Assembly (NCBI GenBank): GCA_002269645.1 | Contig: NIVC01000358.1 | Location: 1-64,000, forward strand | Length of the DNA: 64,000 nucleotides | Source: Macrostomum lignano | Lineage: Eukaryota | Direction of reading: 5' to 3' | Shown: positions 40,561-60,762 of the stretch, one piece after another | How positions within the stretch are numbered: position 1 is the stretch's first letter | Layout of the letters: the number at the start of each line of letters is the position of its first letter | Program-made: the position numbers and the translations under genes | The notes under the pieces: generated by a model | The model's database searches: none | What the model saw: only the letters and a program-made list of their open reading frames with translations | What the model was told of the DNA's origin: nothing

Positions 40561-40626
40561 CTATATGGTTGGTATCTATGTATCACCTAAAGGCTGATCA
40601 CATTTAACCAAACTTTCATCATGCAG

Positions 40627-40895
40627 CCGTCGACATGTGGTCAGCCGGAGCTGTAATATTCTTCGTAGCAACCGGTTATTCACCTTTCGCACCGGCCATG
40701 CACGAACCCAAAGAGGTAGTCTACTCTCGCGTAGCAACTGTCGGCTGCGACTGGTCTCTGCTAGCTGGCCACGAGTCCGAGTCCCTGGTACAGCAGCTGC
40801 TAGTTAAAGAGGCCGACCGGAGGTTGACAGCCGAGGAAGCGCTCAAGCACGAGTTCCTGCGACAAAGGCCAACTAACAAAGTTGAAACTGATTGA
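40627..40895 (+). CDS. DRAK/STK17-like kinase last exon (subdomains IX-XI)
   Basis: catgcag|CC GTC GAC ATG TGG in phase 1 continues exon 3 as EPISTAVDMWSAG...TGYSPF...LVKEADRRLTAEEALKHEFL, completing the kinase domain. Confidence 0.85.
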
Positions 40896-41409
40896 GAGAG
40901 ATCAACTGCTGACAGGTAATGTAGTTTAGCTCGATTTTTTTGTAGTCGAAAGACACAGAAGACTATATAGTCTTGTCTTTGCTATTATCTGGAATTTTAT
41001 AGTCTTCAGATCCAGAAATTTTTCAGTGCTTACTCAGGAGATTAGGGCGCCATATATCTTAATCTCTTATCTCTTGCTTGGGGTGTGCCTCTGCTTAACT
41101 CTCTCTCCATACTGGCATGGCGTGCACACAATAAACCTATTGGAATTTGAAAGCGAGGCGCCGCTGGCATGCTATTGAAAGATCGAATACCTGAGTATAT
41201 TATCATACAACCTAGTGGTGCGGTCTAGTCCGCTTAAGTATACTTGTACATGGTATGGCTCGGTTTGTTTGCACTTAAAAGTTTGCGCGCGACCGAAGCA
41301 GCTGTAAAACTAAGAGGGTGTGAGAGCTATACAGTGTATGACTTACAAGAGTCAGTTTTGCTTGCAGTCGGCCTCCCAGTGTGAAATCACACTTCCTATC
41401 TGGTACATG

Positions 41410-41770
41410 TTATAGGCCGGTGCTCCTGTCTTTTGGTGGACGCCCCCGTCTCTTAAGATCGGCGCACCTGTCTCTTAGTGGGTGCCTCCGTCTCTTGGGT
41501 GGGTGCCAATGTCTCTTGGGTTGGCGCCCCTGTCTCTTGGGTGGGTGCCAATGTCTCTTGGGTGGGCGCCCCTGTCTCTTGGGTGGGTGCCAATGTCTTT
41601 TGGTGTCCGCCCCCCGTCTCATAGATCGGCACCCCTGTCTCTTAGTGGCGCCCTTGTCTGTTGGGTGCTAATAATGCCACTTGGGTGCCAATGTCTTTTG
41701 GTGGGCGCCACCGTCTCTTAGATCGGCGCACCTGTCTCTTTGGTAGACGCCCGTCTTGGGTGGGAGCCAA
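41410..41770. repeat. Degenerate 19/38-bp GC-rich minisatellite (GGGTGCCAATGTCTCTTGGGTGGGCGCCCCTGTCTCTT)
   Basis: Repeated GTCTCTT-anchored units. Confidence 0.8.
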
Positions 41771-42715: not shown

Positions 42716-43203
42716 TATGGCTATGGATCGAAAGAGATCCCGGGCCTCTGCATTGGCTTGATGCCGATGCGAAAAATCGATCTTTCGGTTAAATAGTTCA
42801 ATTTTTTGTGCTGCATATTTATATATATATATATATATATACGATGTACAAAAATTATTGTATAGTAGATAACGTTTTTATTTTTTGTCAGTGTTTATTA
42901 TTTTTACCTTCGATCCTGTCTAACTGAAAATGTAAATGATAGCTACCAACAACATTATTTTGCATTGGAATAGGCCAATCACCAATTTGATTTTCTACTC
43001 AAGTGTTCTCGTTAGCTAGTTATAGCTACTAGTACACATGTACACCGTCGTTAAGTTAGAACAAGTAACCCAAAAGCTTGCAACTAATAGTAATAACAAC
43101 AATGAACTTAACACAACTTTAAGTCTCGTTCACACTGAGCCATCAATCAGTGTCCTACTAGCTATAGCCATTTTGTGTGATCTGATCACGTACGGATTGC
43201 GCA

Positions 43204-43575
43204 CATGGATGAATGAATAGAATGGATTGCTATTCTGGCTCTGGCTATTTTCGTTTTTGACTCTTTTGCATCCGGTTCCCCCCCCGTGCCTTTTCATTGG
43301 TTGATGATTGCCATGGACAGTTTTCGGCCTTTGCCCCTTTCTTTCGATGCACAAGCGCTTTCTTGTTAGTAAATAGAAGTTACTTGTGTTGAAATTGAAC
43401 TTTGTTGAAATTCTCAGTTCTTTGCGCTTGTGCATCGAAAGAAAGGGGCGAAGGCCGAAAATTGTCTATGGCAATCATCAACCAATGAAAAGGCACGGGG
43501 GGGAACCGGATGCAAGAGTCAAAAACGAAAATAGCCAGAGCCAGAATAGCAATCCATTCTATTCATTCATCCATG
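43204..43575. mobile_element. Foldback/MITE, ~153-bp near-perfect inverted arms with a 65-bp spacer
   Basis: 43204-43358 is the reverse complement of 43424-43575 with few mismatches. Confidence 0.85.
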
Positions 43576-44824
43576 ATTGCGCATGAACAGATCTTTAGTA
43601 TCGATGCCAATTGTTATTCCGATTGGCGAAATATCCAAAATTATGCCGATGATATATTTTTAGTTCAGGCTTACAGGTTACATGTAGTCAGGTTTATCCC
43701 ATATAATTTTTTTACAAACCTAGCATGCCGAACGACAGCCTGATATCATAGAATTGTCTTTACTCTAACCTTTTACTCTCTCTGGTCATGTAAAAAAATT
43801 CGCTTTTTACCTTTTTAAAACCTTTGCTATACAATTAAATAAAATATCTATCAAGGATCACTAGAAGTAACCGTATCAGGAAGTAGTAACGATCGCTTTT
43901 TATGGAAAATTTTTGTAAATCAAATTTGCCTAGAAATGCATTAGCGAGATAGGTAGCCAAGATTTTGAATCCTATGAGCACATAAAACTAGCACATGTTC
44001 AGTCCGATGTGGCTTCATCAATTTATCGACTTAGGTATAAATTCAGTGACTGCTACTAGTGACTAAACTAAAAAAACGCGCAAAATTATAGCGTCCATAT
44101 TTATTAAATGTACTGGTACCTTTTCTTGTCGACTTTTTCTCGTTCAAGGATTGTACTGTGGCTGTGGTAAAACCCCATTTCTACAGTGCACCTCGTTAAT
44201 GCATTTTTAAGCAACACAGGAACGCGTGGTTGTCCTGACACAAATGAGTAAATTCTAGTGGTCCCTGCTAGCTATTTTTCACAAAAATGTAGTTACATTA
44301 GGAGCTACCCGGAAAGCTTAGCATGTCGTTTTGACCATTTGATACTTAATATTTTGTATCAAGTTCATACGCCAATGTGCTGAGAGAACTATTTTTTGTG
44401 TAACATTGTTAAAGACAGACTAAATAGACTAAACCTTACTCATGAAAAAATTAGTAGAATCAATATTTTCATAGATTAGAGATGTAAACAGAGTACACAT
44501 TTGGAGAAAAACTCGACACAACAGAATGTTGAGTCTTTCATCTTTCTTTTATTAATTCCTCGTACATTAAATATTGCATAAAGGAACACGAAACTGTTCA
44601 AAGTTAGGCCAAGTACACAAGTCATGACAGAGAAAAAACAGACTCGAAATATGACTATCATAAATTAATCAGCAACTTTGGATTGCCTTTTGACAACGTT
44701 CATAGACAACGTTCACCATAACCCCATGACTCAAACTACCTGATTTTTTAAAGCCAGCTATCGCCAACGAACATACTAGACCCAAACTATTAGAATTGAT
44801 ACAAAAATTGTAAGTCCGTTACAC

Positions 44825-45835
44825 GTAGCAGTAGATGGATCTTCTTAGCATCAAAATCAGACACAGTTTGTCTCAGCTGCTGGTCATTGACCTTGACCAA
44901 ACGTTCAGCTTCACTGATTGACCCAAACTGTTCGAGTCATCTTGCGTAAAACGGAACCACTCAGATCCGCCATATAGTGATCAGTGAATGCTGAGCGATG
45001 TATACGGAGCGTGGTGTTTACTGTCACAGCTCAGACAACAAATAAAATCGAACCCCAGTTCGAACAGCCGTCAATTAAACGGATTCAAGTGGTTGAGTTA
45101 TTTTAGAATCCGGTTCATAGAGGATGACAAGACACGGCTGAGAATTGAGAAAGGCTCTGCAAATCAGGAGACTCTGTCTTGATCACCTTGTCCTGAGAAT
45201 CCACATAAAAGTCGTCAGTGTTGTTGCAGCTGATGAGATTAAGCGGGTGAACCCTGCAAAACTTAAATCTCCCTTTTGAGCTCATAAATTCGCTTACCAA
45301 TGCAATCCTTGTCTGCAGACTCGCACAACTGCATCACTTCAGTCATGTGCCTGTCAATGAGTATCTTTAGGCCTCTCTAATACTTCCGCTGCCCAGCCAC
45401 GCAATCTTCGTCAGCTGTGTTATTATTCAGTTCGTAGACTCTCCTGGCGTCATCATTGGCTTCCGCTGCCGCACATGCAGTCTCATACTAGTCCAGTGCA
45501 GCGAGGTCTCCCAGCTTCTGCAGTGCGCTGTCGTGTTTGATAATCAATAGGTTTGTCACAGGCTCTTACCATGTACATTATTCTGAGAATAGGTGTTGTC
45601 AGCGCTCATTTTGACGCCGCAGCCGCTATGTTTTGTCACCCTAAAGCAAAATTTTAGATTTCCATAATGGGTCACAAGGTGGAGTGGGGGGGGGACAAAA
45701 TATTGCCATGCCCCCATAGCTTTTGGGTGGTGACGACGCCCCTGGTCACAGCCGTCTTCCAGTTGTTCAGCGAGTCCACAGCTGACTCCAGTCCATGCAA
45801 TTGCACTGCGTTCTGAGTTCTCAACTACTTCTAAA
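44825..45835 (-). pseudogene. Degenerate fourth paralog of the Zn-motif/coiled-coil/NHL family
   Basis: Recognisable blocks AVDSLNNWKTAVT, KHDSALQKLGDLAALD*YE...RRVYEL, IDRHMTEVMQLCE...YELKREI*VLQGSP, ADLSGSV, DKLCLIL...SIYC align by eye to the intact paralogs. In-frame stops at 45488-45490 and 45263-45265; frameshifts; a ~183-bp insertion. Confidence 0.8.
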
Positions 45836-46741
45836 TAGTTTGCAAATGAAATTATGAAAAAGTCATGAAGGCGAAATATTATTTTTAACCACTAAAGCCG
45901 AGGGTGCTAAACGCCGGATAACACCCTTCTTTGAATTTTAGAGCTTTGGAGCACAGAAAGTCAACATATTTATATTTCAATCTTATTTCGAATGTTAGCA
46001 TTGAAGAATGGTATTGATAAACTTTTAAAAACGTTTCTACGCTCGTAAAATCACAAAAACTTTAAAAAGGAGAAGAGACGTTTGTGTTAAAAAATCTTCT
46101 GGAATATTAAAGAATACAACCAGGGCTGTCAATCAAAATTGTTTGCTGGTAAACATATAAACAATATATGTTTGAAAGCATCTGCAAAGAACGATAAAGA
46201 TTAATACTCAGATTACTTAATTGCAATATACTCGTACATTTAAGCTACTTAGGGGAAAACTGTAACTGTAAAAATCTGCAAGGCACAAATTCAGACGATT
46301 TTACACAATAGTTAGCACAAAATCAAGTGCATATTCGCCGACAAGCAATTCGGTACAAAATATTCAGGGTCAGTCTCATAGCATGGTGGATTTTAGTTAG
46401 CTGCTCGAAATTATACAGAACCAATAAAGCGCCTTCGTGAAGGTCCAAATACCTGAATTAACCCTAAATGGTAAAATGGATTTTCCATTGGTGGCTAAAC
46501 TATTTTCGGTAACGCATAGTTTACAGGAATCTTGACACTTTCAGCACATTCTCATGACGAGGCACTTGCTTACGATAAGCTAAAAGGTAAATTTACTATT
46601 AATACTATCAAACATTAAAGTAAATTATAAATTCGTTCTTGAGCAGTATATATAGCACCTGGAGTAGAAAAACAATTATGAAGTAAAAACATGGTCACTG
46701 ATTTATATTTGTCAATGAGCACGGTTCAAAAATCGGTAAAA

Positions 46742-48262
46742 TCAATTCAGACTGGGAGCGTTAACTTTGAAGATGCTGACAGCATTTCGACCCTTTTGAC
46801 AAATTGCAAGCATTGGCACGTCGGCGTCAAGTACATCAAGGCCGTAAGGATCGGCCATGGCAGTAGAATCGTCTGGCATTCCAAGGGTTTGCAGAACTTC
46901 TCCATCTTGTTTCAATACTCGAACCAGATTCTTGGTGCTTTGACTGACAAATATGAGACCTGACCGGTGAGCAACAACATCAGCAGGGGTTGGAAGTTCA
47001 CATGCTGCGATAAGCCGTCCGCTAATAGTGCAAATTTTGAGTACATGATTTGCATTCCAATCTGTCACCAGGATTGAGTTGCCAAGTGGTGATAAACCTT
47101 CATAAATCACACCTGCACAGTCAGAATACATTCCTGCCAGATTAATTTTGCTTATGAACCGGGTATCACTTTTCGACCAACATAAAATACTGATGCTCTT
47201 TTGCTCCAAGAGGTAAATTTTTTCGCTGCAACCGCCAATCGCTAAAAACTTGTAGTCCGAATCGCTCGATTTTATAACATTTCGAATGTAACCATTTAAA
47301 TCTGCAACAGTTACGCGGTCGGGCTGTCCCAGAAACAGCGCTTGGCGTTTGCTGTCGCAATGAATTCCAATAGAACGAACTGACCAATCAATGTCGCAGT
47401 TGACAGTAAGCCTAACGGATCCATCGAGCGAACACAAAAGGATATGGTCTTTCTTTGAGTCCACATGGAACATTATAAAAACGCACTGTGCTGGAACTTC
47501 TGCACCGCTGCCTGAAGAAGAGGCTACTTTTACTACTCGACCTGCTGAGTCAGAAGTAAAACCTTCCGTGTTTTTGCAGGCTGCGACCCACTGAGGTGCA
47601 CCATCAAACTCCACAATTTCCCAGTCGAGCTCGCAGATCTCTTTCTCAATCACAGTTTTGCCATCAACCTCGCAGTGCTGCGCCACTTCTCTCATTTGCT
47701 TGTCAACCAGCAGAAGCAAGTCTCGCAGACTGCCGCTCACATCGCCTACAATTCTCCGAGCATCATCGATGCCCTCTGCAGTCTCCTCTGCATCAGCCTC
47801 TTCCAGCTTGTCTTCCAAGTCAGTGCATTTCAGCTCCATCTCAGAGCTGAGTTCAAAAACTTTTCTCAAGTCGTTGGCGCTCTCAGCTGCATCAATCGCA
47901 CTATCGTACTCCTGCAGCACAGAAAATTCAGTCAAATTTTCTAGAGCACCGTCGTGTCTCTCCGTCAGTCGTGTTGTCACCGATGACCTCCACTTTGTCA
48001 ACAAGTCGAAAGCTTCATCAAGCAGGTCGTCAGCAGCCTGAAGCTCGGCAGCCAGGGTCTGTTGGTAAGTTCTTAGCTGGTCTCTCTTAGCTTTCATAGG
48101 CGCCAGTTTGTTTTGCACAGATCTCTGCAGCTCTCGCACTTTTTGTCTGTCCTGATCAAGGTGCTTCTGGCACAGAGGCTGAGGGATGCGACCACCGCAA
48201 CCCGAGATCGGGGCGCTGCAGCCTCTGATGAAGCACGCATCGGAAGTCGAGGCCTCAGACAT
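46742..48262 (-). CDS. Intronless C3H zinc-motif / coiled-coil / NHL-like beta-propeller protein (TRIM-NHL-like, RING-less), paralog 1, 506 aa
   Basis: N-terminal CFIRGC-x15-CQKH; heptad-rich helical region; C-terminal repeats such as PADVVAHRSGLIFVSQSTKNLVRVL and DPYGLDV resemble NHL blades. Confidence 0.8.
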   Translation of the reverse strand: MSEASTSDACFIRGCSAPISGCGGRIPQPLCQKHLDQDRQKVRELQRSVQNKLAPMKAKRDQLRTYQQTLAAELQAADDLLDEAFDLLTKWRSSVTTRLTERHDGALENLTEFSVLQEYDSAIDAAESANDLRKVFELSSEMELKCTDLEDKLEEADAEETAEGIDDARRIVGDVSGSLRDLLLLVDKQMREVAQHCEVDGKTVIEKEICELDWEIVEFDGAPQWVAACKNTEGFTSDSAGRVVKVASSSGSGAEVPAQCVFIMFHVDSKKDHILLCSLDGSVRLTVNCDIDWSVRSIGIHCDSKRQALFLGQPDRVTVADLNGYIRNVIKSSDSDYKFLAIGGCSEKIYLLEQKSISILCWSKSDTRFISKINLAGMYSDCAGVIYEGLSPLGNSILVTDWNANHVLKICTISGRLIAACELPTPADVVAHRSGLIFVSQSTKNLVRVLKQDGEVLQTLGMPDDSTAMADPYGLDVLDADVPMLAICQKGRNAVSIFKVNAPSLN

Positions 48263-49394
48263 GGGAGCGCAACATCAAGTTAAAATGCACAATACTTAAC
48301 TGCATGTGGTGTGCAACATTTAATAATGTAAATGGATCATGTCTACAAGTGTATAAATTAGATTACGGACCATGTCACTGGGTTTTTCATTATCTATATT
48401 TTTATAGTTAAATATCTCCAGAAAATAACATAAAACATGAAACACACCGAACAAAAAGTTGAATTCAGCAAGTGCGAGCTACATAATAAAAAAGCCTATG
48501 TGCTATCTATCAAAACCGGAGGAGTATTGAAGCTACTGGATACGAATAACCAATAAAGACGCTAAACTCGTGTAAATGTAAGTGGTTTTATATCAATCAA
48601 GGTTTCAACGTACTATATTTCACTGCAAAAAAGTTTTCGGTTGGTAAGAAACAGTAATACAAATACAAAAAAGTAATATAAATATACCGTTATATTTATT
48701 TCGTACAGATCATACAAAAAACGCGAGACAGTTTGTTGCCCAAAAACCGATTGCTGAGAAAATTCACAATCCGTTGCAACAAAAGTAGCTTAAAAGTTGA
48801 CAGTCGAAAAAAATCGATGTAAAATTGACATCGCAAAGTAAGAAAAAAGCACCTGTTAAATACAATTCTTTGAATGACGTAGCATATGGATGTACAATCA
48901 TAAGAACACAGCCAACGAAGTAGTAATCGAGTTTTTATAATATGTACTAAGGAAGTATTGCAATGTAAGTAGCTTGAAAAAGTATCTGATACATATATTG
49001 TGCTCAGTCAGTAATCATTTTCCTGATTATATATGTGCATATGCATATAAATGTTGCTACATCAAATCGAATACAAAATTTAAGCCTAAAGTTGACTGAA
49101 AACAGTAAAAAAGCTTGCTGAGAGTTTTGTCCTCAGTTTTTTTCAAGCCGCCACCACCCAGAGGTAAACGCCACTGTATTTTTTAAAAGCTAAGTTTATA
49201 CTTAAAATCGATATCTAGTTGTGCCTTCTTATGCACTACTTATGTCACTATATTATTATGATGCATCATAATACTACAAAAAAACTGCAGACTTGAAATG
49301 GCAACTGACGAATTTTAGACACAGAACCAGCAACTCCAGATCGCCTTTGACGAGGGTCAATTAAACAGGTTTGTCTAGTTTTCACTGCGGCAGC

Positions 49395-49430
49395 GCAGCC
49401 TCTGATGTAGCAAGCAATTCATCCTGGTTG
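49395..49430 (-). pseudogene. Isolated 5' fragment of a further paralog (CYIRGCAA)
   Basis: TGCTACATCAGAGGCTGC matches paralog 1 TGCTTCATCAGAGGCTGC at 17/18 nt, preceded by ttatttcag and an out-of-frame ATG; similarity is lost after a few codons. Confidence 0.5.
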
Positions 49431-49837
49431 CCGAAAGTTGACTGAAATAATAAAAATCGGCTGGGTGTATGCGTGACGGTTATTGAATATTACCTACCTA
49501 CTTATGAATATTATGTGATACTATGAATATTATTATATAGGTAATACTATGAATATTACCTACTGAATATTACCTACCTACTTATTGAATATTACCTACA
49601 TATATCAAAGAATATAAAATCTATGGACTAAATGAAAATACACAACGCTCTGAAATCTGAGTGCCAGGCATGGAGGAAAGAATAGAATGGAGTGCTAATC
49701 TGAGCCAGTTATTTTTGTCCCGCTCGATCTTCACTTTTAGTATCCCTTTCCCCCACCGTTCCTTCCTATTGTCTTGTGACTGCCATAGACAAAGTCGTTT
49801 CGTTTTCGCCCCCCTCTGAAAGGCATGTCCCAGCATA

Positions 49838-50515
49838 GTATCGCTTTTGACGCTCTAGATAAGACTTTAGACATTCAAAATAAGACTGCATAGGATCGCA
49901 AGCAAGGCCAGGCTAGCCACGGCCAGAGCATGCCCAGTCTTGGCTGCAGGGATGGCTTGGCCATAGACTAAAAAATGGAATATCAAAATGAGAATAAGAC
50001 GCTCAATATGAGACTGAGTGTGAAAGCCTTCAGATATCGCTCTAACCCTCTGACCCTCAGCCAGCTCTCCTTCTTCACCCCTTGGGTTGCATCTTACCCC
50101 TTGGATTTCACTGTTTCAGCTGATTTCAGCTGAGAAGGCGGCCTGATGGGAACTCCGCTGTCAGAGGCACTTTGGCAGGTGCTTAAATCGAATGGCCTTC
50201 TAACGCAGTCCGCCAGGCTGAATTCAGTGATGGACTAAACATTTCGATATGCTATTCTGCTTCTTGTTTATTGCCTAATTTCTCCTTAGCTGTTTGTATA
50301 GTGACTGCCAAAAAGCAAATAAATTACGTTCACTCCCGGTCTCATATTGAGCGTCTTATTCTCATTTTGATATTCCATTTTTTAGTCTATGGCCAAGCCA
50401 TCCCTGCAGCCAAGACTGGGCTTGCTCTGGCCGTGGCTAGCCTGGCCTTGCTTGCGATACTATGCAGTCTTATTTTGAATGTCTAAAGTCTTATCTAGAG
50501 CGTCAAAAGCGATAC
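49838..50515. mobile_element. 678-bp foldback element with 177-bp nearly identical inverted arms
   Basis: 49838-50014 versus 50339-50515: two mismatches found by eye; the arms contain CCATAGAC; no clear TSD. Confidence 0.85.
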
Positions 50516-51470
50516 GAGCTCACATCAAAATATGCTTACAGCCAATGGGAGCCGTTCGGTCGGAATGAGAAGAGCTTTAAATAATTGATTGCATATTTAT
50601 TCCTAGCGATAGCACCAAAAGTATTAATTTATTAAGATATAAGTAATACATACAGATATAAGTAATACATTTGTTTCATATATTTTTAGTTTACGGACTA
50701 AAGCCAAAGTTCAGGCGGAACGCGAAAATCGTTAACTTTTTAAAAATCTACGTCGGCATTATACATAAACTATAAATATCATCTGGTCTGAAGTTGCCAA
50801 CCACTGTGCGAAGAGAGTTTAAGTTAGAGGCGTCTTTGGTTTCTACCGTAGACGATTCTGAGAAAGGGAAATTGATTTGGTCGCCTGCACTTGGAGCTGA
50901 GCGCAAAGTGAATTAGCAAAAACTAAATAAAATCAGTAGAAGTGCCTGGAGTATAAAAACCCATAAAGATACTCGTATAACGGTGTAAACAATCGCTTGT
51001 TCCAGCAAATTCTTAATTTAACAATCTTAGAATTGGGGCTTTGCTTTGTTAATCAAAAGTAACAATCAATAACAAGTAGTCTAAATCTGATCTGTCGTAA
51101 AAAAACAACTCAAAACATCAAACTGTTTTGAGTCTTAGAAAGATCTACCAAAGATCTGCCAATTACTGTAAAAAAATAATAATTCAATTAGGCACGCCAG
51201 TTAAGTCTAAAAAGAAGAACGTGATAAAAATGTTTTCTATTAAAAATAAAGCACATAGCAATAATACCACCAGTTTCAGCTATTGGCAGAAACAAATTCA
51301 AAATACTATAAGTAATACAAACACGAGCGCACACATAAAATCAACAAAATATATTCAAAAGGTAATTTGGAATTTATCGGAATTATTTTGTTAACAAGAT
51401 GACGGCAATATTAAAGATCAGTAAGATTCACAAAAAAGTGATTTAACTATCAGGAGGGACATTGGGTCAA

Positions 51471-53080
51471 TTAGACGCAACAAATCGTGAAAATGCTGAC
51501 AGCCTTGCGTTTTTCTTGACAGACGGCTAGCATCGGAGGGTCGCCTTCCACGACTGCGAGGCCATATGGGTCAAACTTGTAACCACTATCAGTGCTACCA
51601 GAACCTTCTTCATGATCTTTGCTACTATTGCTACTGTCATCTCCTTCACTTTCGTTCTCGTCATCTTCAGAAGCGAATTGAAGAGTCTGCAAAATGGTTC
51701 CGTCATTCAATAGGACATAAACTGAATCGGACAGACTCCGGCTAACAAAGACCAATCCGGATGAATGAACCGCAACATCGGCAGGAAATTCGAAATCGGC
51801 GGGCTCGCTCAAATCAGTGGGATACGATACTACGAGTTGGTGACTCACAATGCAAATCTTATGCAGCTGATCTGAAGCCCAATCGGTCATTAAATGAAGT
51901 GGCCAAAAGCAGACAGACCTTCATAAAGTACACCGCTATTAGTTGGGTAGTACTTCGATACGTCAATGACAGACTGCAATTGCTCGCCATCCTTTGCCAG
52001 ACAAAAAATGCTGGAATTTTTCTGCTCCAGAAGAAACAATTTGTCCGAATTTCCGGTCATACCGACGAATTTGCATTCAGAAAGACCTAAGCTTTGGGCG
52101 TTGACGGCATGAGTTATAGAGCCACTCAGATCTGCCACAGTCACAACGCTAGACTGCACGATATACAAACTTTGCCTATCGCTGTCACACTGAAGTCCAA
52201 CAGCTTCCACAGACCAATCGATAGCACAGTTGACAGCTAGTCGCAATGGTCCATCAATTGATGTGGCAAGAATATGGTCCATACCAGAGTTAACATGAAA
52301 AACTACAAACAAGCACTGAGATGTAAGGCTAATAGGCTTACTAACGACAGTTGATGCCTTCACCAAGTTGCCTTTCGAGTTTCCAACGTATCCGTTGGTG
52401 TTGCTGCAAACTGCAATCCACTGTGGCGCACCTTCAAGCTCTAGAATTTCGGAATGAAGCTGACACAGCTCTTTCTTTTCTGTTTGGCTCGGAGTCTCGG
52501 TTGATTCGCAGAGTCTTGAAATTTCTTTCATTTTTACTTCATTTAGCAAGCGAAGATCCCTCAAGCCACCGCTTACATCGCCAACAACTCTGGTATCGCA
52601 ATTTACTTTCTCGTTGGCTTCAAGCTTCTCTTCTAGGTCAGTGCACTTTAGCTCCATTTCAGAAGTGAGTTCAAACACCTTTCTAGTATTTTCATCACTC
52701 TCAGCTGCAGTAATTGCATTTTCATATTCCTGCAGCATTGAAAACTCTCCTAAATTTTGCAAAGCATTGTCGTGCCTTTCAGTCAACAGAGTAGTGACAG
52801 CTGACCTCCACTTTACCCACGAGTCCAAAGCTTCATCAAACAGATCCTCTACAGCCTGCAGCTCAACAGCCAGAGTTTGCTGACGAATCCTAATCTTGTC
52901 CCGCTCGGCAAGCATCGGCTCTAACCTAGCCTTCATCGAAATTCGTAATTCTCTAACTTTCTCGCTGTCCTGGGCCAGGTGCCTTACACAGAGTGGCTGA
53001 GGAATCCGACCACCAAAACCGGATGCGGGGTTGACGCAACCTCGAATGAAGCACTGGTCGGAAGCAGATTGCTCAGACAT
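51471..53080 (-). CDS. Zn-motif/coiled-coil/NHL-like protein, paralog 2 (split by a 1-nt frameshift at ~51890)
   Basis: The 396-aa and 139-aa ORFs join into one protein if a T is added (CAC TTC ATT TTA ATG ACC GAT TGG = HFILMTDW, cf. SILVTDW and ALLLTDW in the paralogs). Confidence 0.78.
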
Positions 53081-53973
53081 AGATGCAGCAGAAATTCAAT
53101 ATTGGTGGTATTCAGTTTAACGTCAATTCTTATTGCGGAGAAATATTGTTTTCAGATGAGATAGTGGCAGAAATTATCCAATTCTGAACACTCCAGTTAC
53201 AATAACTCCTCTTAAAAGTACGTATCTAACGAGGCGAAAGAGTCAAAGGTAAATCGCGTCTCGCTTCACAATCCATCACGAACAAACGATTTGGCGCTTG
53301 TAAATAAAAAAAATTACCGGTGCATTTCTGCGGCTTTGCATATTCCAAAAAATGTCTTTGAAACGAAAGGTTGTAAAAAGGGACAAATAGTAGAGCGACT
53401 ATTTGGGCTATTGAGTTCGTTTGAAGTTCGTTTGAATCTCTAACGACAATGACATGCTTTATATTAGAGCTCGCTACATAATTAGAAACTAAACAAATCA
53501 AATGCAATTCTTTTAATGTCCAAAATAAATTAAAACTTTGGCATATATTTTTTGTTTAAAACAAAAAAGACAAACGGTATAGCTGCAAGAATTTAGCTAT
53601 AAAGACACGGCGACGCCAAATGGATTTACAATTGCCAGTAATTCCTAAAGAGGGGTTTATTAAGCTTTTCGGTTTGACAGAAACTACGTGTTTGAATAAA
53701 AACTACCTGAACTTTTAATTTAGCTTACAAACAAAATTGTAAAAGTAAGTAATTCAACCTAAAATTAACAATAATATGAGAAAATGCAAGTCAAATTTAA
53801 CTTGAGAATGAAAAAAAAACGTGTAGGCCGAATACAACGAACCAAAACCTTGAAAAAATTATGGAAAAAATAAAAAGCTAATACGTGCAAAAACCTGGAA
53901 CCAAAAAACAACTAGAAATTATATAATTTGACTTGTAAGACGCGTCGGTCAGTCGTCGCACAATGTATAGAAA

Positions 53974-55515
53974 TCACTCGCAGTCAATGCGAATGCGGTA
54001 AACGCTGATGCTATTTCCTATTCGCTGGGACACTAGTAGCAAATCGGGTTTGCCATCAACGATGGTAAGCCGGCACGGCTTGTTCATGGGCTCATTAATT
54101 GGGCCAAAAATACTGATTGTTCCGAGGCTCTGCAACAGAAACCCGTCGTTTCTTAGGACGCGCACCATATGCTTTGAACGCTCGCTGACAAATATGAGGC
54201 CAGAGCGGTGAGCCGCAACACCGGACGGGTCTGCGATGGTTTTTAGCGCGGTTTCTTTGCTTGGATACGATACGATTACATGACCGCTCGCGATGCAGAC
54301 TTTATGTAGCAACTTAGCGTTCCAATCGGTCAGTAGCAAGGCGTTGTCTAGCACAGCCATGCTCTCAATGTGAGTACCATAGTGAGAAATACCTTTGATT
54401 GAAATAACGGACTGGACCCTACCACTGCCTTTGTCGATGCAAAACACTTGCTTGCTCTGCTCACACTGCTGTAAAGCAAATATCTTGTCCGTATTGCAGG
54501 TCATCCCGATTAGCTGGCACTGCTGGCCAAAGTTGCTAGAGTCAACGAAACGCATCGCTTTACCGCTAAGATCTGTCATCCGTACTGAATTGGACTGAGC
54601 AACAAAGAGAGCCTGCCGTTTGCTATCGCAGCAAAGTCCGACAATTGGCTTGGACCAGTCGATATTGCTGTACACTTTTAGTCGGATAGATCCATCTATT
54701 GAGCATGCCGAAAAATGATCAACTTTTGATGTTGAATGGAATGCAACAAAAATGCACGGCTCAGGAATGGGAACAACAATGTCATCTGCAGCCGGATCCG
54801 CCTTGATAACTCGATTCAATGTGTCAGCGGTGAAACCTTTCGTATTGCTGCAAGATGTCACGTGAGTAGGAGAGCCCTCTAGATTAGCAATTTTGCACTG
54901 GAACTCACAGATGGAAGTCTCTTTAGAGGGCATACCTCCAGGCTCGCAAAGCTGCATCGTGTAACTCATTTGTCGGCTAATTGACAGCTGCAGATCTCTA
55001 AGGCTACCGCTAATGTCACCAACGATTCTCTGAGCACAGTTTTGGTTATTATTGTCGAGCTCAATTTGCTCTTCCAGGTCGCTAGATTCAAGATCCATCG
55101 CGGCAGTTAGGTCAAAAACTTTCCTAACGTCATTGTTATTCTCAGCTTCAGTGACGGCGCTTTTAAACTGTTGCAGTATGGAGAACTTGCTCAGCTTCTG
55201 CAGCACACTGTTGTGCTTTGTAGTTAGTCGGTCTAGAATAACGGTTTTCCACCTTGTCAGCAAAGCCAATACAGACTCGAACAGTTCCTCGGACTCTTCC
55301 AGTTCTGCAGCCAGGGCCTGTTGCTGCAATCGAAGAGCGTTTCTGTGAGCCAGGAAAGTTTCCAGCTTATTAAGCACAGATTTGTGAAACTCTTGCACTC
55401 TCTGCTTGTCCTGTTCAAGATGCCTCTCACACAACGGATGCGGTATTCTTGCGCCAGTGCCCGAGACGGGAGCGACGCAGCCTCGGATGTAGCATTCTGG
55501 ATCTGTGCCGCTCAT
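53974..55515 (-). CDS. Zn-motif/coiled-coil/NHL-like protein, paralog 3, 513 aa
   Basis: CYIRGC-x15-CERH; coiled coil; DPSGVAAHRSGLIFVSERSKHMVRVL NHL-like blade; colinear with paralogs 1 and 2. Confidence 0.8.
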   Translation of the reverse strand: MSGTDPECYIRGCVAPVSGTGARIPHPLCERHLEQDKQRVQEFHKSVLNKLETFLAHRNALRLQQQALAAELEESEELFESVLALLTRWKTVILDRLTTKHNSVLQKLSKFSILQQFKSAVTEAENNNDVRKVFDLTAAMDLESSDLEEQIELDNNNQNCAQRIVGDISGSLRDLQLSISRQMSYTMQLCEPGGMPSKETSICEFQCKIANLEGSPTHVTSCSNTKGFTADTLNRVIKADPAADDIVVPIPEPCIFVAFHSTSKVDHFSACSIDGSIRLKVYSNIDWSKPIVGLCCDSKRQALFVAQSNSVRMTDLSGKAMRFVDSSNFGQQCQLIGMTCNTDKIFALQQCEQSKQVFCIDKGSGRVQSVISIKGISHYGTHIESMAVLDNALLLTDWNAKLLHKVCIASGHVIVSYPSKETALKTIADPSGVAAHRSGLIFVSERSKHMVRVLRNDGFLLQSLGTISIFGPINEPMNKPCRLTIVDGKPDLLLVSQRIGNSISVYRIRIDCE

Positions 55516-57794
55516 TTTGCATCAAGATACATGCAAATGCAATGTGTTGATTGACAAGATAATAATAAATATCAGGCATTTATCTAAGATGAGATAGGTA
55601 ACCTAATTAGCTGAATGTACCAGCATCTAAATTTTACAGTTTTTTGTGATTGAAGAAAAAAATTAAATAAAAAATATTTTACTCTATCTACCATCTGACC
55701 TCACAAACTTACATACGTCACAGGACCTAGATAAACACGAAAAAATAAAGGATACAAAAATGACTCATTTGAGTGTTTTACACTCATTGTAATAGAAACT
55801 ATTGCGATCAAAAAACATGATTGTATAAATTATTAAAGATCCACATTAAAATAAAGCCACCAATATTTTCGAGAAAAGATTTGCATCCTAAATTTTGAGG
55901 CATTTAATTAATCAGAAGGCATGAGAAGTATACGAGATGCCGAATAAACGTCAAAAATGAATTTCAATCGAAAACAAAATCATGCAATCGCGTAAAAGTT
56001 GCTATTCAATAAAAATAGCGGCAATTTATTAAAAGTTGTTAATATACGGACTCAATCGGTACATGCCTATCGACTATATTTCTAGAACTGTTCCGGCAAC
56101 ACGAGCACGCTGCCGTAGCTCACTACGTACCGTCGTTACTCGATACTCACATTGCCGGCCATGGCGCGTTTCAACTTATTAACTTTAATCTTATTAATGA
56201 TCCAACATTGTACTCGTAAACAGCCTAATGACAACAGAATGATAGTTAAATAATTAGTTATTTCAACACCTTTGACGCAATGTTATGCTTCTTTCCGTGG
56301 CTTGTAAATGACGTCATGGACCATAGAACATTGCTTCGTTACAACGCACAGGTGATAACTGATAACGCAATTATGTTATAATTGCATATCATTTTTTTAA
56401 TTTGTATGAATAAATCAAGTCTTATGGCTTTTTGCTTTAAAGAAAAACTTTTTGTGCAACTCGCCGCCGCATAACCGATTATGATTTTGAGTAATCTGTA
56501 ACTGTACAAACTTAAAGTATAGTTATGCTTTTGCACTCTGAATTTGTAGTACGGGTCAAAATTGTCACTCAAGCAGAAGTGTTTTTTGTTAAATTGTTTA
56601 TTTATATTTAGTTTTTAGTTAAAATATTGTTAAAAGCAACACTCTGTTATTGCTATTATTAAGTAAACAGTTATATAGATAACAGTTGTGAAACGGTTAG
56701 TTTTTTGCATTTCGCATAGGACTTGCAGCAGTATATAAACCGTAACAGTTATTCTCTACTCCTAAAAAACAAGTCCAAGATGTATAAACACAGAACGAAA
56801 TTCCTTATATACGTAAGGAAATCGTTTTGTTTTAACTGGGGTTCTAAAGTGCTGGTGTCTCGAAGCTTGCTGTAATATACAGAAATAAAAATAAGTACAA
56901 CGTTCTGAGAGCCAGTATTTTTTGTAGAAATTTCTCACTTTTTCTTCAAATTTCGAAACTTCAATTTCTATTTGTCAACCTGGAAACACAGCTATCCTAG
57001 GACTATCAATTTATTGAAATCTAAAAAGAAATAAAAAACGATTTGTTTGCGAAATCTGCAATTAAAGAAACGATTGAGATCAAAATGTCATTCCTATTAG
57101 TGCAAATTATATTTATTAAATCGAATATGCACGGAAAATGATCAATATCTGCACACATCTGCCAGAATGTCAACTATGTTGTGACAGGCTATGCTCATTA
57201 TTTACTAGTAAAAGCATAGCGGCAACTGTAGTATATCAGCAAGCACAGCCTTCTGAGGAATTAAAACAGTCAATATAGCTTTGAAAACATGGAAATCGAT
57301 TCCAGCATCACTAATAATTTGAAGTAGAGAAACAAAGGCGAAAAAGCGATGTAAATTTAATCCAAACGCAGAACTGAGCAAAGCATATTAGGAAAATTAT
57401 AGAAAAACATTCAATCTCAGCTTGATAATATAGCACGGTTAAAAGTTACAACTACTCAAAACACGTGGAACTATAATTTTATTATGAAACATACAAAAAT
57501 GAAAATGCTGCTTGCCTAATTCGTTCACTCATCTCGAAAATCATGCAGTAGCTACCCCAGATACTAGAACAACTAGATTTGTCGCTCGCAATCGCAATTT
57601 ATGTTGTGAATAAGTCTACTTGTTTTTTAGTAGTTTGTCTGCGCAGTTTCTTTTAAATTAAATGTGGCAGCTGACACCGGGGTTTGCCGCCTCAGGAGCA
57701 TATTGGGTGAATAATGAACAAAAAGCATTAAACTCGATGTACACAAGTGAACGCAAGACGGACAAAACTCTGCCTAGGGAGCAGGCTCAATCTA

Positions 57795-57985
57795 GCTCAG
57801 CCAATGAGGGAGCAGTAAGGAGAGAGGGCAAAGTCAGAAGGACGAAACTCAGCCTAGGGGTAGGCCCATCTGGATCAGCCAATGAGAGAGCAGTAAGGAG
57901 AGAGGGCAAAGTCAGACTGACGAAACTCAGCCTAGGGGTAGGCCCAATCTGGATCAACCAATGAGAGAGCAGTAAGGAGAGAGGG
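57795..57985. repeat. 78-79-bp tandem repeat (2.5 copies), each unit containing CCAAT
   Basis: CCAATGAG at 57801, 57879 and 57958. Confidence 0.85.
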
Positions 57986-58894
57986 TAATGAGGCTTGCTA
58001 TGCACACTGAAATTTGGAGTGCTAAATAAATCCTTGTTAAATATTTTCAAGCCTAAAGCGGTCTATAAAACAGGATGAAGATGCTAATTTAATCGATCTA
58101 CTTGTAGAAACCAGAGGCCACCGTTGCAGCTTAAAAAACTTAATATCAAGTAAATCACAGCATTTTTGTGAGTGACAGATCTTTTTTTAGTATATGTGCT
58201 AGTTACATATACATGTATTAACAGTAACAATGATTAATCAAAGACAAAGCAAATAAACAATTTGCTATGAAATAGAAATGAAAAATGGTGCCAAAATGAG
58301 TGAGCATATCTACATGAACTACAGAGACAGAAGAGAACTTAGAATACCTAAGCAAGAGATCAGTTTCAATAGTGTTAAAAATGACTTAGTACATTTTGCG
58401 CTTGCTAAAGAAAATATACATCCAAAAATTATTCCGAGTAGTAACGGTCAAAATAATAGTAGAAAACAAAGGGTATATTAGTTACAAAGACTAGTTGGCA
58501 GTCTAAAGACGATATCAAGGAAGTCAACACGGGGTTCCAGATACACAGCCAGAAAATGTCTTCACACTTACTACATACTTCACAGGAATTTAATAAACAT
58601 GTAAGGCATACGAGCCATAATTTTCGATAAATATGAAACTATTTAATGGAGTTCGATTAGATGTTATAAGCAAAAGATAAATATAATACACCCTGTGCTT
58701 AAGAAATTATAGCAACTGATAGGCCACTAATACTTTAAAATCTATGCGTAATTATGGCTTTTCTATTTTTCTAGATTGGATTTAGGGGGGGGGGGAGGGT
58801 GCGATTCCTTTGCGTTGGCGACTGAACCTTTTTACTTTCACAGAACTATTTTTAGGTAAATACGGCGCTAATCAGAGCTTTTTTTGAAAATTGT

Positions 58895-59323
58895 CACGCA
58901 TAAAAGTGGGGCAGTCACAATTTTTGATCACCGTCAATTAATGTGACCCTGCAATGTGACTGTCAAATAAATGGTTACTCACGTAAACGTCAATGTGACT
59001 GTCAAAAAATTAAACGACCGTCATTTTCACCCTGTGCGTTAGATTAGATTGATTTAAGAAAACATATAACGGCAAAAACAAACAACTTGATATAAGTGAC
59101 TTATATTTGAAGGTCACATAAGTGACCATTTATTTGATGATCACATTAGAGGGTCACGTAGATGGTCACATTGACGATCACATAAGTAGGCGTTTATTAG
59201 ACGGTCACATAAGTGACCATATATTTGACGGTCACATTGAAAGATCACTTTGACGGTCACATGCGATACCGTTGTTTGAGTGTCGAGAAATGTCGAAATG
59301 TGACCGCTACACTTTTATACGGG
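58895..59323. mobile_element. Degenerate MITE-like element with imperfect TIRs and internal (G/T)GTCAC repeats in opposite orientations
   Basis: CACGCATAAAAGTGGGGCAGTCACA versus the reverse complement CCCGTATAAAAGTGTAGCGGTCACA; TGTGAC motifs in the left half and GGTCACA motifs in the right half. Confidence 0.5.
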
Positions 59324-59426
59324 CAGTTGAACACTTACTATCATATCTAGGTGCTTGAACAAAACAGAAATAATAAATAATAATCCTGAGAAATCATTAT
59401 TATAAACTACACAGCGCTGAGCAAGT

Positions 59427-60083
59427 CTACTCCAGAGCAGGAGGAAACAGGCGCTCTTCAACGTATTTCAATTGCCACACTTTCCCTGCCAATCGCTGGA
59501 ATCTCTCCGGCCCCATTATGTCGCGCAGAGCGTCTTCGACGTCGTCTGGATCGCGCGAAGCGTCGTCAAGAACTTCGTAGCAACGTCGCAACAGTTGCAG
59601 ACCGAGCTGTTGAAGACAGTCGCGCCTCAGCTGCACCATACGGTCGCGCATTCGTCCAGTACGGCCCAGGGTCTCCTCTTTAGACTCGATCGGTCCGCAT
59701 TCGCTGTCGTCGGCTTCGTTGTCAACCTCCGTCGGGTTTGACGCTGACGCCAAGTCCGATGCCGCCGCTCCAGACCTCGGCGAAGCTGCCGCAGCAGCCG
59801 CGGCCACAGTCAGAGTCTGGTTCATGTGCTCCACTAAATCGGCCATCTCCGCCGCCTGCTGCTGCTCGCGATCGCCTGAATTGCTTCGGCTGCCACCGCC
59901 TCCGCCGCCGCCGCCGCTAGAGCCGTTTCTATCGGCGGTTTTATCAGACACTGGCGATTGAGATTTCTTCTGTCTCTTCTGCCGCTTCTCTGAGGCATCA
60001 GCCTCGTGCTCGCTGCTGTCTCTGCCGGCATCGTTGCCGACTGCCGCCGCCGCTGGCACGGAAGCTTTTGGCGAATCGCGTGG
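59427..60083 (-). CDS. NEK4: NEK4 last exon (conserved C-terminal helical domain)
   Basis: ttttcag|CCA CGC (phase 0). LRRDCLQQLGLQLLRRCYEVL...MG...KVWQLKYVEE resembles the NEK4 C-terminus. Confidence 0.85.
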   Translation of the reverse strand, partial: PRDSPKASVPAAAAVGNDAGRDSSEHEADASEKRQKRQKKSQSPVSDKTADRNGSSGGGGGGGGSRSNSGDREQQQAAEMADLVEHMNQTLTVAAAAAAASPRSGAAASDLASASNPTEVDNEADDSECGPIESKEETLGRTGRMRDRMVQLRRDCLQQLGLQLLRRCYEVLDDASRDPDDVEDALRDIMGPERFQRLAGKVWQLKYVEERLFPPALE

Positions 60084-60124
60084 CTGAAAATTAGCAAATA
60101 AAGAAATCGCTTTTTATCTATTTT

Positions 60125-60670: not shown

Positions 60671-60762
60671 TGAAAGTCTCGGATTGGCCGTCTTCGGTCT
60701 CCTTTGCTTCTGTTTGAGCACTAACGACTGCAGATTAGAATACTGTTCAGAGTTGGTAAATG
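60671..60762 (-). CDS. NEK4: NEK4 exon 3
   Basis: aatttcag|CA TTT ... CTT TCA|gtgagt. 92 nt, phase 1 in and 0 out, open, bridging exons 2 and 4. Confidence 0.7.

What the first reader, a model, noticed from the sequence alone, without database searches (positions are those of the whole stretch)
44825..55515. Birth-and-death cluster of intronless zinc-motif / coiled-coil / NHL-propeller genes (RING-less, TRIM-NHL-like)
Seen: three colinear ~510-535-aa minus-strand paralogs plus a pseudogene and a 5' fragment within ~11 kb. All lack introns, whereas every other gene here is heavily spliced. The N-terminal motif is conserved while the propeller blades differ strongly between copies. Known: TRIM-NHL proteins use B-box/coiled-coil for oligomerisation and NHL propellers for RNA or protein binding, and many TRIMs act in antiviral defence. 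Inference: this is a lineage-specific, fast-evolving receptor or restriction-factor family, possibly an undescribed invertebrate innate-immunity or RNA-recognition system. It is the best candidate for a novel system in this window.
Basis: partly seen in the sequence, partly recalled or inferred. Interest (0 to 1): 0.78.

Follow-up and report, generated by a model that had tools for sequence, protein, structure and literature searches.

The report
Flatworm zinc-knuckle, coiled-coil, NHL-propeller gene cluster
This is a tandem cluster of intronless genes from a large, undescribed Macrostomum (flatworm) family that joins a small zinc motif and a long coiled coil to an NHL beta-propeller; it resembles TRIM-NHL proteins but lacks their RING and B-box, is gaining and losing copies, and has no known function.

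Summary
The window is Macrostomum lignano DNA. It carries three minus-strand paralogs:
- c1, 46742-48262, 506 aa, intact.
- c2, 51471-53080, broken by a 1-nt frameshift.
- c3, 53974-55515, 513 aa, intact.

It also carries a degraded pseudogene (about 44735-45574) and a roughly 20-30 nt relic of the N-terminal motif (49383-49415). All three paralogs are single-exon.

The AF2 model is confident (pLDDT 87). It shows an invariant C-x4-C-x15-C-x2-H knuckle, a 97-residue helix with two return helices, and a propeller. The propeller best matches TRIM71 and TRIM3 NHL domains (TM 0.78). The family profile hits Thin NHL at E=1e-32.

No RING is present. No B-box is detectable by Pfam, PDB profile or Foldseek, so the family is TRIM-NHL-like but not a TRIM.

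About 30 divergent clusters were found. Nearly all are M. lignano hypothetical proteins; a few sit on short environmental contigs. They often lie in tandem arrays that include broken copies. One array has at least 5 copies about 80% identical.

dN/dS is about 0.35-0.5, higher in the propeller. That indicates relaxed constraint, not demonstrated positive selection.

Birth-and-death evolution is supported. The immune or restriction-factor reading has no evidence either way. Verdict: an uncharacterised variant of a known kind, of moderate interest.

The parts
46742..48262 (-). c1: intact single-exon gene, 506 aa. Zinc knuckle (C10, C15, C31, H34), coiled coil and NHL propeller.
   Evidence: ORF. 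Family HMM E=5e-175. 94% identical to M. lignano PAA BOX15_Mlig022866g7. dN/dS against that counterpart is 0.34.
51471..53080 (-). c2: paralog closest to c1 (53% aa identity). In this window it is split by a 1-nt frameshift into a 396-aa ORF and a 139-aa ORF. It is a likely young pseudogene, or the frameshift is a homopolymer assembly error.
   Evidence: Its counterpart in L001 reads through this site (GHFILMTDW). That counterpart instead carries a 160-bp GC-rich insertion, flanked by an 11-bp direct repeat, in the last blade.
51888..51893 (-). Frameshift site in c2. ATT TAA TGA is read here where the L001 counterpart has ATT TTA ATG.
53974..55515 (-). c3: intact single-exon gene, 513 aa. Its nearest relatives (P0004, P0005) lie on other contigs.
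   Evidence: ORF. HMM E=5e-189. 99% identical to BOX15_Mlig022866g4. Tree.
55420..55494 (-). c3 zinc knuckle: C8-x4-C13-x15-C29-x2-H32.
   Evidence: C8, C13 and C29 are invariant and H32 is at least 90% conserved across 15 family members. It is modelled as a small beta element that leads straight into the long helix. It matches no Pfam zinc-finger family.
54946..55428 (-). c3 coiled-coil region: helix 30-126 followed by return helices 130-155 and 158/164-190.
   Evidence: AF2 models with pLDDT above 90 over most of the region.
53992..54909 (-). c3 NHL beta-propeller, aa 203-508.
   Evidence: Foldseek TMt 0.77-0.78 and rmsd 3.9 A to TRIM71 and TRIM3 NHL domains. Profile against PDB hits Thin NHL at E=1e-32. 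Pfam NHL is sub-threshold for c3 itself (16.9 bits against a cut-off of 20), but 7 of 21 family members match, best E=6e-9.
44735..45574 (-). Degraded pseudogene covering aa ~90-310 of the family. It lacks the zinc motif and the distal blades and has several stops and frameshifts. The robust part is 45163-45574.
   Evidence: tblastn E=1e-14 to 1e-8 with several family members in three frames. Stops are visible in the translation. HMM fragments.
49383..49415 (-). Relic of the 5' end of a lost copy. It encodes ...ACYIRGCAA..., the first half of the zinc knuckle.
   Evidence: The 18-mer pattern is found 3 times with 0 expected.

Best explanation
**What it is.** The cluster belongs to a Macrostomum-restricted multigene family of cytoplasmic, non-enzymatic adaptor proteins. 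Each protein has three parts:
- a single C2CH zinc knuckle;
- a long helix that starts at the knuckle, followed by two shorter helices that fold back on it;
- a C-terminal NHL beta-propeller.

**How it most likely works (inferred).**
- The helical hairpin forms an antiparallel dimer, as TRIM coiled coils do, so that two propellers are displayed.
- The propeller is the most variable part. It is the ligand-binding module and differs in specificity between paralogs. Its ligand is RNA or protein.
- With no RING, the proteins cannot ubiquitinate on their own. They would act by binding, sequestering or recruiting partners, in the manner of Brat-type post-transcriptional regulators.

**How it evolves.** The family changes by tandem duplication, local gene conversion and frequent pseudogenisation, that is, birth and death. 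It most likely descends from, or shares an ancestor with, TRIM-NHL proteins.

**Shown:** domain architecture, absence of a RING, the family's restricted distribution, tandem arrays, broken copies, and moderate purifying selection.

**Inferred:** zinc binding, dimerisation, the type of ligand, and the biological role.
For: **Organism and family**
- The window is M. lignano DNA, and about 30 clusters of paralogs were found.

**Structure**
- Full-length AF2 model: pLDDT 86.7, pTM 0.71. It shows a beta knuckle, helix 30-126, return helices and a propeller.
- The N-terminal model gives the same picture, pLDDT 89.
- C8, C13 and C29 are invariant and H32 is nearly so.
- The propeller's best structural matches are the six-bladed TRIM71, TRIM3, TRIM2, Thin and LIN-41 NHL domains (TMt 0.70-0.78). 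These beat seven-bladed WD40 and YncE folds at about 0.55-0.64.
- Profile against PDB gives Thin 1e-32, TRIM71 5e-24 and TRIM2 6e-21. These rank above NHLRC2, SOQ1 and the bacterial PknD.

**No RING**
- The ORFs start a few codons before the knuckle, with in-frame stops 9-18 nt upstream.
- The transcript-based gene models start at the same place.

**Tandem arrays elsewhere**
- L002 has 3 intronless members.
- L004 has at least 5 copies about 80% identical, 2 of them disrupted.
- L003 has 2 members.

**Selection**
- dN/dS is 0.34-0.58 between the window and its counterpart copy.
- In the young L004 array it is about 0.4 overall, 0.24-0.43 in the coiled coil and 0.41-0.54 in the propeller.
- Codons 61-135 are homogenised in that array (pS 0.03), which suggests gene conversion.

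**Paralog differences**
- Propeller charge differs between copies: pI 5.3, 4.4 and 8.5. This fits different ligands.
Against: - The N-terminal half shows no sequence or structural homology to TRIM B-box or coiled-coil domains. Descent from TRIM-NHL therefore rests on the propeller alone.
- Dimerisation, zinc binding and ligand type were not tested and cannot be tested with these tools.
- There are no expression or phenotype data.
- The blade count is not settled. The structural matches favour six blades. The sequence periodicity over residues 216-292 could hold one or two divergent units, and unit-against-unit hhalign was inconclusive.
- dN/dS of 0.4-0.5 together with many broken copies also fits a partly dispensable family.
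Confidence: 0.55

Rival explanations
1. The family is an innate-immune receptor or restriction-factor array that recognises viral or transposon RNA or protein through hypervariable propellers. It would be an invertebrate analogue of the TRIM5 or finTRIM clusters.
For: - It is lineage-specific, tandemly arrayed, and turns over copies through pseudogenes.
- The propeller is less constrained than the scaffold: dN/dS 0.50 against 0.17 for c1, and 0.41-0.54 against 0.24-0.43 in L004.
- Local windows have pN/pS at or above 1, at c3 residues 239-283, 314-358 and 434-463.
- There is precedent in another spiralian. TRIM genes, including TRIM3-like ones, are associated with herpesvirus resistance in oyster (PMC9437489).
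Against: - There is no gene-wide positive selection, and the windows near or above 1 rest on very few synonymous changes.
- The paralogs in the window are old, with saturated dS.
- There is no RING for effector ubiquitination.
- No expression, induction or infection data were found.
- The same pattern is typical of reproductive and other lineage-specific families.
Confidence: 0.15
2. The proteins are germline, stem-cell or reproduction-related post-transcriptional regulators, with functions like those of Brat, Mei-P26, LIN-41 or NHL-2. They would have diversified under sexual selection or developmental subfunctionalisation in a hermaphrodite with rapidly evolving reproductive genes.
For: - The closest structural and sequence relatives are TRIM-NHL RNA-binding propellers: TRIM71/LIN-41, Brat and Mei-P26.
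- The RING-less state parallels Brat (my own knowledge).
- c3 has a basic propeller (pI 8.5), which is compatible with RNA binding.
- dN/dS of 0.35-0.5 is typical of reproductive genes.
Against: - c1 and c2 have acidic propellers (pI 5.3 and 4.4), which is unfavourable for RNA binding.
- No expression data were found.
- Conservation of the RNA-contacting residues was not tested.
Confidence: 0.2
3. The family is largely dispensable and drifting. It would be retrogene-derived or carried along by repeat-rich DNA, persisting through duplication rather than function.
For: - The copies are intronless while a divergent subfamily has introns, which fits a retrocopy origin.
- The neighbourhood is very repeat-rich and holds mobile elements.
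- Broken copies are frequent.
- dN/dS is 0.4-0.5.
Against: - dN/dS is clearly below 1 over hundreds of codons.
- The zinc ligands are invariant across paralogs that share only 20-30% identity.
- Intact ORFs are maintained across saturated dS.
- The copies have no shared flanks, LTRs or TIRs. DNA similarity ends at the ATG.
- The NCBI models come from a transcript-based core gene set (PMC5730564).
Confidence: 0.08
4. The NHL propeller was acquired by horizontal transfer from bacteria and then fused to a eukaryotic coiled coil.
For: - Most non-family sequence hits are long multi-repeat NHL proteins from metagenomes.
- The genes are intronless.
Against: - The profile ranks metazoan TRIM-NHL domains (1e-32 to 1e-15) far above bacterial and archaeal NHL proteins (1e-6 to 1e-8).
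- Some family members have spliceosomal introns.
- GC content and codon usage were not seen to be unusual. GC is about 0.40-0.43, like the flanks.
Confidence: 0.02

Closest known systems
TRIM-NHL proteins (TRIM2, TRIM3, TRIM32/Thin-Abba, TRIM71/LIN-41)
   Same: - The C-terminal NHL propeller is the best match by both sequence profile and fold.
- A zinc-binding element sits immediately N-terminal to a long helix that has return helices.
- The overall order is zinc element, coiled coil, then NHL.
   Different: - There is no RING.
- There is no recognisable B-box, only one C2CH site where a B-box has two cross-braced zinc sites.
- There is no filamin domain.
- The genes are intronless and tandemly amplified.
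- The family is restricted to Macrostomum, whereas TRIM-NHL proteins are conserved 1:1 across bilaterians.
Brat / NCL-1 (RING-less TRIM-NHL translational repressors)
   Same: They lack a RING and act non-catalytically through the NHL top surface (my own knowledge). This is the best functional analogy.
   Different: - Brat keeps two B-boxes and is a single conserved gene.
- Profile similarity to the Brat NHL domain is weaker (1e-10) than to Thin or TRIM71.
- Two of the three window propellers are acidic.
Clustered, rapidly turning-over TRIM arrays (primate TRIM5/22, teleost finTRIM, bivalve TRIM expansions)
   Same: - Tandem arrays with pseudogenes.
- Lineage-specific copy number.
- A variable C-terminal recognition domain on a conserved scaffold.
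- Bivalve TRIM genes are associated with antiviral resistance (PMC9437489).
   Different: - Those families keep the RING and B-box.
- They mostly use PRY-SPRY domains.
- They show documented positive selection and immune induction. Neither is shown here.
Other NHL-repeat proteins (NHLRC2, PknD sensor, SOQ1)
   Same: They share the NHL propeller fold.
   Different: - They have different partner domains.
- Their profile scores are much weaker.
- They have no zinc-knuckle or coiled-coil module.

Membership tests
TRIM / RBCC family | N-terminal RING finger (C3HC4, two zinc sites) | tested here: not met
   - The ORFs begin 7-9 residues before the only Cys/His motif, and in-frame stops lie 9-18 nt upstream.
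- Only four conserved ligands are present.
- Pfam finds no RING.
- Some UniProt entries for family members are auto-named 'RING-type domain-containing'. Their sequences show only the half-motif C-x2/4-C...C-x2-H.
TRIM / RBCC family | B-box zinc finger(s) preceding the coiled coil | tested here: not met
   - Ten family N-termini scanned against Pfam at E<=10 gave no zf-B_box hit.
- The N-terminal profile against PDB gave only generic helical proteins.
- Foldseek on the N-terminal model gave nothing at E<=1e-3 and no TRIM entry.
TRIM / RBCC family | Long coiled coil with return helices that forms an antiparallel dimer | tested here: inconclusive
   The helix topology is predicted with high confidence: H30-126, H130-155 and H158-190. 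Dimerisation and its antiparallel geometry could not be tested, and no TRIM coiled-coil structure was retrieved.
NHL-repeat beta-propeller (Pfam PF01436) | Matches to the NHL repeat profile | tested here: met
   - 7 of 21 family members match PF01436, best E=5.8e-9.
- The window copies themselves are sub-threshold. c3 scores 16.9 bits against a cut-off of 20.
- The family profile hits solved NHL domains at E=1e-32 to 1e-10.
NHL-repeat beta-propeller (Pfam PF01436) | Six-bladed propeller fold | tested here: met
   - In the AF2 model, residues 203-508 are all-beta with pLDDT mostly above 85.
- Foldseek gives TMt 0.77-0.78 and rmsd 3.9 A to six-bladed TRIM71 and TRIM3 NHL domains. These score better than seven-bladed folds.
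Brat-type RNA-binding NHL | Electropositive top surface that contacts RNA | not testable with these tools
   Only bulk pI could be computed: c3 propeller 8.5, c1 5.3, c2 4.4. No coordinates were available for surface mapping.
Immune restriction-factor arrays (TRIM5 / finTRIM-like) | Positive selection concentrated in the recognition domain | tested here: inconclusive
   Pairwise dN/dS is 0.34-0.58 overall and 0.41-0.54 in the propeller. A few 30-codon windows are at or above 1, but they rest on 0-6 synonymous changes. Site models need more young paralogs.
Immune restriction-factor arrays (TRIM5 / finTRIM-like) | Induction by, or activity against, pathogens | not testable with these tools
   No expression or functional data were found in the literature or in held supplements.

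The most novel reading that the evidence does not exclude
A previously undescribed module, a C2CH zinc knuckle fused to a coiled coil, dimerises to display diversifying NHL propellers. This would form a flatworm-specific, RING-less recognition array against viral or transposon RNA or protein. It would be an independent invention of the TRIM5/finTRIM strategy on an NHL scaffold.
Probability: 0.1. Interest if true: 0.75.

Novelty: new variant of a known kind. Interest (0 to 1): 0.4.

Why it matters
- Macrostomum lignano is a model for regeneration, stem cells and sexual selection, yet dozens of its 'hypothetical proteins' belong to this unannotated family.
- Recognising the family as zinc-knuckle, coiled-coil, NHL proteins gives those genes a structural annotation and a testable mode of action: a dimeric, non-catalytic binder.
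- It offers a natural experiment on how a TRIM-NHL-like scaffold behaves after losing its E3 ligase parts.
- The tandem arrays contain both young paralogs (about 80% identity) and old ones. They are suitable material for studying gene conversion, pseudogenisation and possible diversifying selection on a propeller surface.
- If the family proved to be immune or germline-specific, it would add a spiralian example of clustered recognition-protein evolution.

Tried and rejected
1. **B-box or RING homology of the N-terminus: rejected.** Three tests found nothing:
   - Pfam scans of full proteins and of ten isolated N-termini at E<=10.
   - A profile search of PDB.
   - A dedicated AF2 model searched with Foldseek.
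2. **TE-borne genes: rejected.** The copies share no flanks, and DNA similarity ends at the ATG.
3. **A shared stop after '...FI' in c2 and in the L004 copy d3 (P0180): coincidence.** The d3 stop is an in-frame nonsense codon about 12 residues upstream of the c2 frameshift site.
4. **Reaching further relatives with the N-terminal alignment.** The search for homologous proteins with A2 returned one extra M. lignano member. The word index saturates on coiled-coil words.
5. **Expression and literature: nothing found.** There are no papers on NHL or TRIM in Macrostomum, and the gene IDs are absent from the held supplements of two M. lignano papers.
6. **Blade count from repeat-unit hhalign: inconclusive.** Five units (residues 293-513) resemble each other weakly. 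Residues 210-292 do not resolve.
7. **Rfam and tRNA scans of the window: nothing**.
8. **Viral structure library: only generic propellers**.


Full report
**What is in the window**

ORF listing and tblastn show three colinear minus-strand paralogs:
- c1, 46742-48262, 506 aa.
- c2, 51471-53080.
- c3, 53974-55515, 513 aa.

c1 and c3 are intact. c2 is split into a 396-aa ORF and a 139-aa ORF in different frames, because one T is missing from a T-run at about 51890.

A family HMM searched against the six-frame translation finds these three at E=1e-123 to 1e-189. The only other match in the 64 kb is a degraded copy at about 45118-45574.

Sensitive tblastn extends that pseudogene to about 44735. It covers aa ~90-310 in three frames, with several stops.

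Between c1 and c2 lies a short relic encoding ACYIRGCAA (49383-49415). The 18-mer TGCTWCATCMGAGGCTGC occurs three times on the minus strand (c1, c3 and the relic), with none expected by chance.

Nucleotide similarity among the copies is confined to coding sequence and ends exactly at the ATG. These are therefore old gene duplicates, not copies of a mobile element.

**Organism and context**

The best protein hits are Macrostomum lignano hypothetical proteins. c1 is 94% identical to BOX15_Mlig022866g7 and c3 is 99% identical to Mlig022866g4.

The GenBank contig NIVC01003278.1 (locus L001) is colinear with window 37615-58563 at 94-98% DNA identity. It is probably the duplicated or allelic block expected in this hidden polyploid. 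Its assembly has 180 Mb in blocks at least 95% identical (PMC5730564).

The neighbours are an otopetrin fragment, a gypsy-type LTR retroelement, an MBOAT gene and a protein kinase with a split kinase domain. Many minisatellites are also present.

The NCBI models for the c1 and c3 counterparts are single-exon. The genome averages 4.9 introns per gene. The intronless claim therefore holds. 'Every other gene heavily spliced' is overstated.

**Architecture**

An alignment of 21 family members (A1) gave a confident AF2 model of c3, with pLDDT 86.7 and pTM 0.71. The model has:
- a small beta element at residues 16-29;
- an uninterrupted helix at 30-126;
- two return helices at 130-155 and 164-190;
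- an all-beta domain at 203-508.

Foldseek ranks six-bladed NHL domains best. TRIM71 and TRIM3 give TMt 0.77-0.78 at rmsd 3.9 A, followed by TRIM2, Thin, LIN-41 and Mei-P26. Seven-bladed WD40 and YncE folds score lower, at 0.55-0.64.

The family profile hits solved NHL domains at the following E-values:

| Structure | E-value |
|---|---|
| Thin | 1e-32 |
| TRIM71 | 5e-24 |
| TRIM2 | 6e-21 |
| NHLRC2 | 9e-13 |
| Brat | 1e-10 |
| bacterial PknD | 3e-6 |

Pfam NHL is sub-threshold for the window copies. It is met by 7 of 21 family members.

The exact blade count could not be verified. Five sequence units (residues 293-513) are NHL-like. Residues 210-292 are too divergent to resolve.

**The N-terminus**

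In a 15-sequence N-terminal alignment, C8, C13 and C29 are invariant and H32 is at least 90% conserved. The motif is C-x4-C-x15-C-x2-H, with C-x2-C in some subfamilies. The last two ligands sit at the start of the long helix. That arrangement suggests a treble-clef-like single zinc site (inference).

It is not a recognisable B-box or RING:
- Pfam at E<=10 finds nothing relevant.
- The profile search against PDB finds only generic helical proteins.
- A separate N-terminal AF2 model (pLDDT 89) has no Foldseek hit at E<=1e-3 and no TRIM entry.

In-frame stops 9-18 nt upstream of each ATG exclude a contiguous RING-coding extension.

The 'RING-type' names on some UniProt entries for family members reflect the half-motif only.

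The family therefore works like a TRIM-NHL scaffold in outline but fails two of the defining TRIM features.

**Family size and distribution**

An exhaustive HMMER search with c3 found 344 hits. About 30 clusters at 50% identity carry the N-terminus, the coiled coil and the propeller. The rest are generic NHL-repeat proteins that match only residues ~420-480.

Every N-terminus-containing hit that was looked up is either M. lignano or from short JGI environmental contigs. One of these contigs (L005) encodes a complete 533-aa member in a single ORF. No member was found in any other annotated genome.

Members commonly sit in tandem:
- L002 has three intronless genes.
- L004 has at least five copies about 80% identical. 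One has an in-frame stop and one has an insertion plus a frameshift.
- L003 has two members with 1-2 introns. Intron absence is therefore a subfamily trait, not a family trait.

A neighbour-joining tree puts c1 and c2 as sisters and places c3 with P0004 and P0005 from other contigs. All five fall in one clade.

**Evolutionary dynamics**

The window paralogs are old. dS is saturated and dN is 0.39-0.54. Identity is 64-74% in the zinc motif, 39-65% in helix 1 and 38-47% in the propeller.

dN/dS between the window and L001 counterparts:

| Gene | dN/dS | Note |
|---|---|---|
| c1 | 0.34 | coiled coil 0.17, propeller 0.50 |
| c2 | 0.38 | |
| c3 | 0.58 | only six differences |

In the young L004 array (dS about 0.2), dN/dS is about 0.4 overall, 0.24-0.43 in the coiled coil and 0.41-0.54 in the propeller.

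A sliding window over that array shows codons 61-135 nearly identical among copies (pS 0.03), which suggests gene conversion. A few windows have pN/pS at or above 1, but they rest on very few synonymous changes.

Constraint is therefore real but relaxed, and is weaker on the propeller. Positive selection is neither shown nor excluded.

c2 is damaged differently in the two homologous blocks. The window has the frameshift. L001 has a 160-bp insertion flanked by an 11-bp direct repeat. That fits ongoing gene death. A homopolymer assembly error in the window copy cannot be excluded.

**Interpretation**

Best-supported reading, confidence about 0.55. The proteins are non-catalytic and probably dimeric NHL-propeller adaptors, related to TRIM-NHL proteins through the propeller. 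They have diversified by tandem birth and death in the Macrostomum lineage.

Propeller charge differs between paralogs (pI 5.3, 4.4 and 8.5), which suggests different ligands.

The immune restriction-factor idea (about 0.15) and a germline or reproductive regulator role (about 0.2) are both compatible with the data and untested. No expression or functional information was found. TRIM expansions linked to antiviral resistance in oysters are a precedent only (PMC9437489).

A drifting retrogene family (about 0.08) and bacterial horizontal transfer (about 0.02) are disfavoured. The evidence against them is dN/dS below 1, invariant zinc ligands across very divergent paralogs, transcript-based gene models, introns in one subfamily, and the ranking of metazoan over bacterial NHL domains.

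**Verdict**

c2 is broken. The 5' fragment is only about 20-30 nt. The neighbours are not 'heavily' spliced.

The architecture, the absence of a RING, the lineage restriction and the birth-and-death dynamics all hold. B-box homology, rapid adaptive evolution and immunity are not shown.

This is a new variant of a known kind and is of moderate interest.

Noticed in passing
window 49838-50515: A 678-bp element with 187-bp terminal inverted repeats that are 97% identical (49838-50024 and 50329-50515). It is flanked by a TA duplication. It is present in the window but precisely absent from the homologous L001 site (empty site ...AGCATAGTACGAGCTC...). This is a polymorphic, apparently recently mobile MITE or foldback element of Tc1/mariner type, lying between c1 and c2.
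   Followed up: partly
window 43198-43583; related pieces at 49669-49791: A 386-bp near-perfect palindrome (85% self-complementary), with about 70% similar copies between c1 and c2. It is probably another foldback or MITE family.
   Followed up: no
L001 7278-7437 (counterpart of window ~51628-51647): A 160-bp GC-rich insertion flanked by the direct repeat GACAGTAGCAA. It interrupts the last blade of the c2 counterpart. It encodes a fragment with a CPDCG...HRKTC motif followed by a stop, and looks like a transposon-derived piece.
   Followed up: partly
window 29867-33624 (+): A GC-rich (0.64-0.67) Ty3/gypsy-type LTR retroelement. RT and RNase H lie in one ORF and the integrase in an overlapping ORF in another frame. 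Its composition contrasts with the host DNA at about 0.40 GC.
   Followed up: partly
window 879-27403, 39493-41667, 57756-62689: An exceptional density of minisatellite arrays. Examples are a 49-bp unit x 50 copies at 9746-12167 and a 14-bp GA-rich unit x 135 copies at 13094-14962, which has strong GC skew. These create long spurious ORFs.
   Followed up: no
L004 (NIVC01003604.1) 2268-16644: A tandem array of at least 5 family copies about 80% identical. Codons 61-135 are almost identical among the copies (pS 0.03 against about 0.2 elsewhere), which suggests gene conversion of the central coiled coil. The NCBI model P0180 chimerically joins two adjacent copies.
   Followed up: partly
L005 (JGI sample 3300040775, contig Ga0450778_159907) 134-1735: A complete 533-aa family member encoded as a single ORF on a 1.9-kb environmental contig. 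It is 33-36% identical to c3. This indicates the family exists in at least one other organism, presumably a macrostomid. The sample's habitat is not known to me.
   Followed up: partly
window 1820-2614 (-), 34948-36045 (-), 61777-63409 (-): Neighbouring host genes: an otopetrin exon, a 365-aa MBOAT acyltransferase exon, and a Ser/Thr kinase whose catalytic domain is split across two exons of about 200 aa each.
   Followed up: partly
c1 residues 194-222 (window ~47597-47683): 12 of the 29 amino-acid differences between c1 and its L001 counterpart cluster in the linker and first propeller strand. In this stretch the L001 copy matches c2 (LHSEILEL), which suggests a small gene-conversion tract between neighbouring paralogs.
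   Followed up: no
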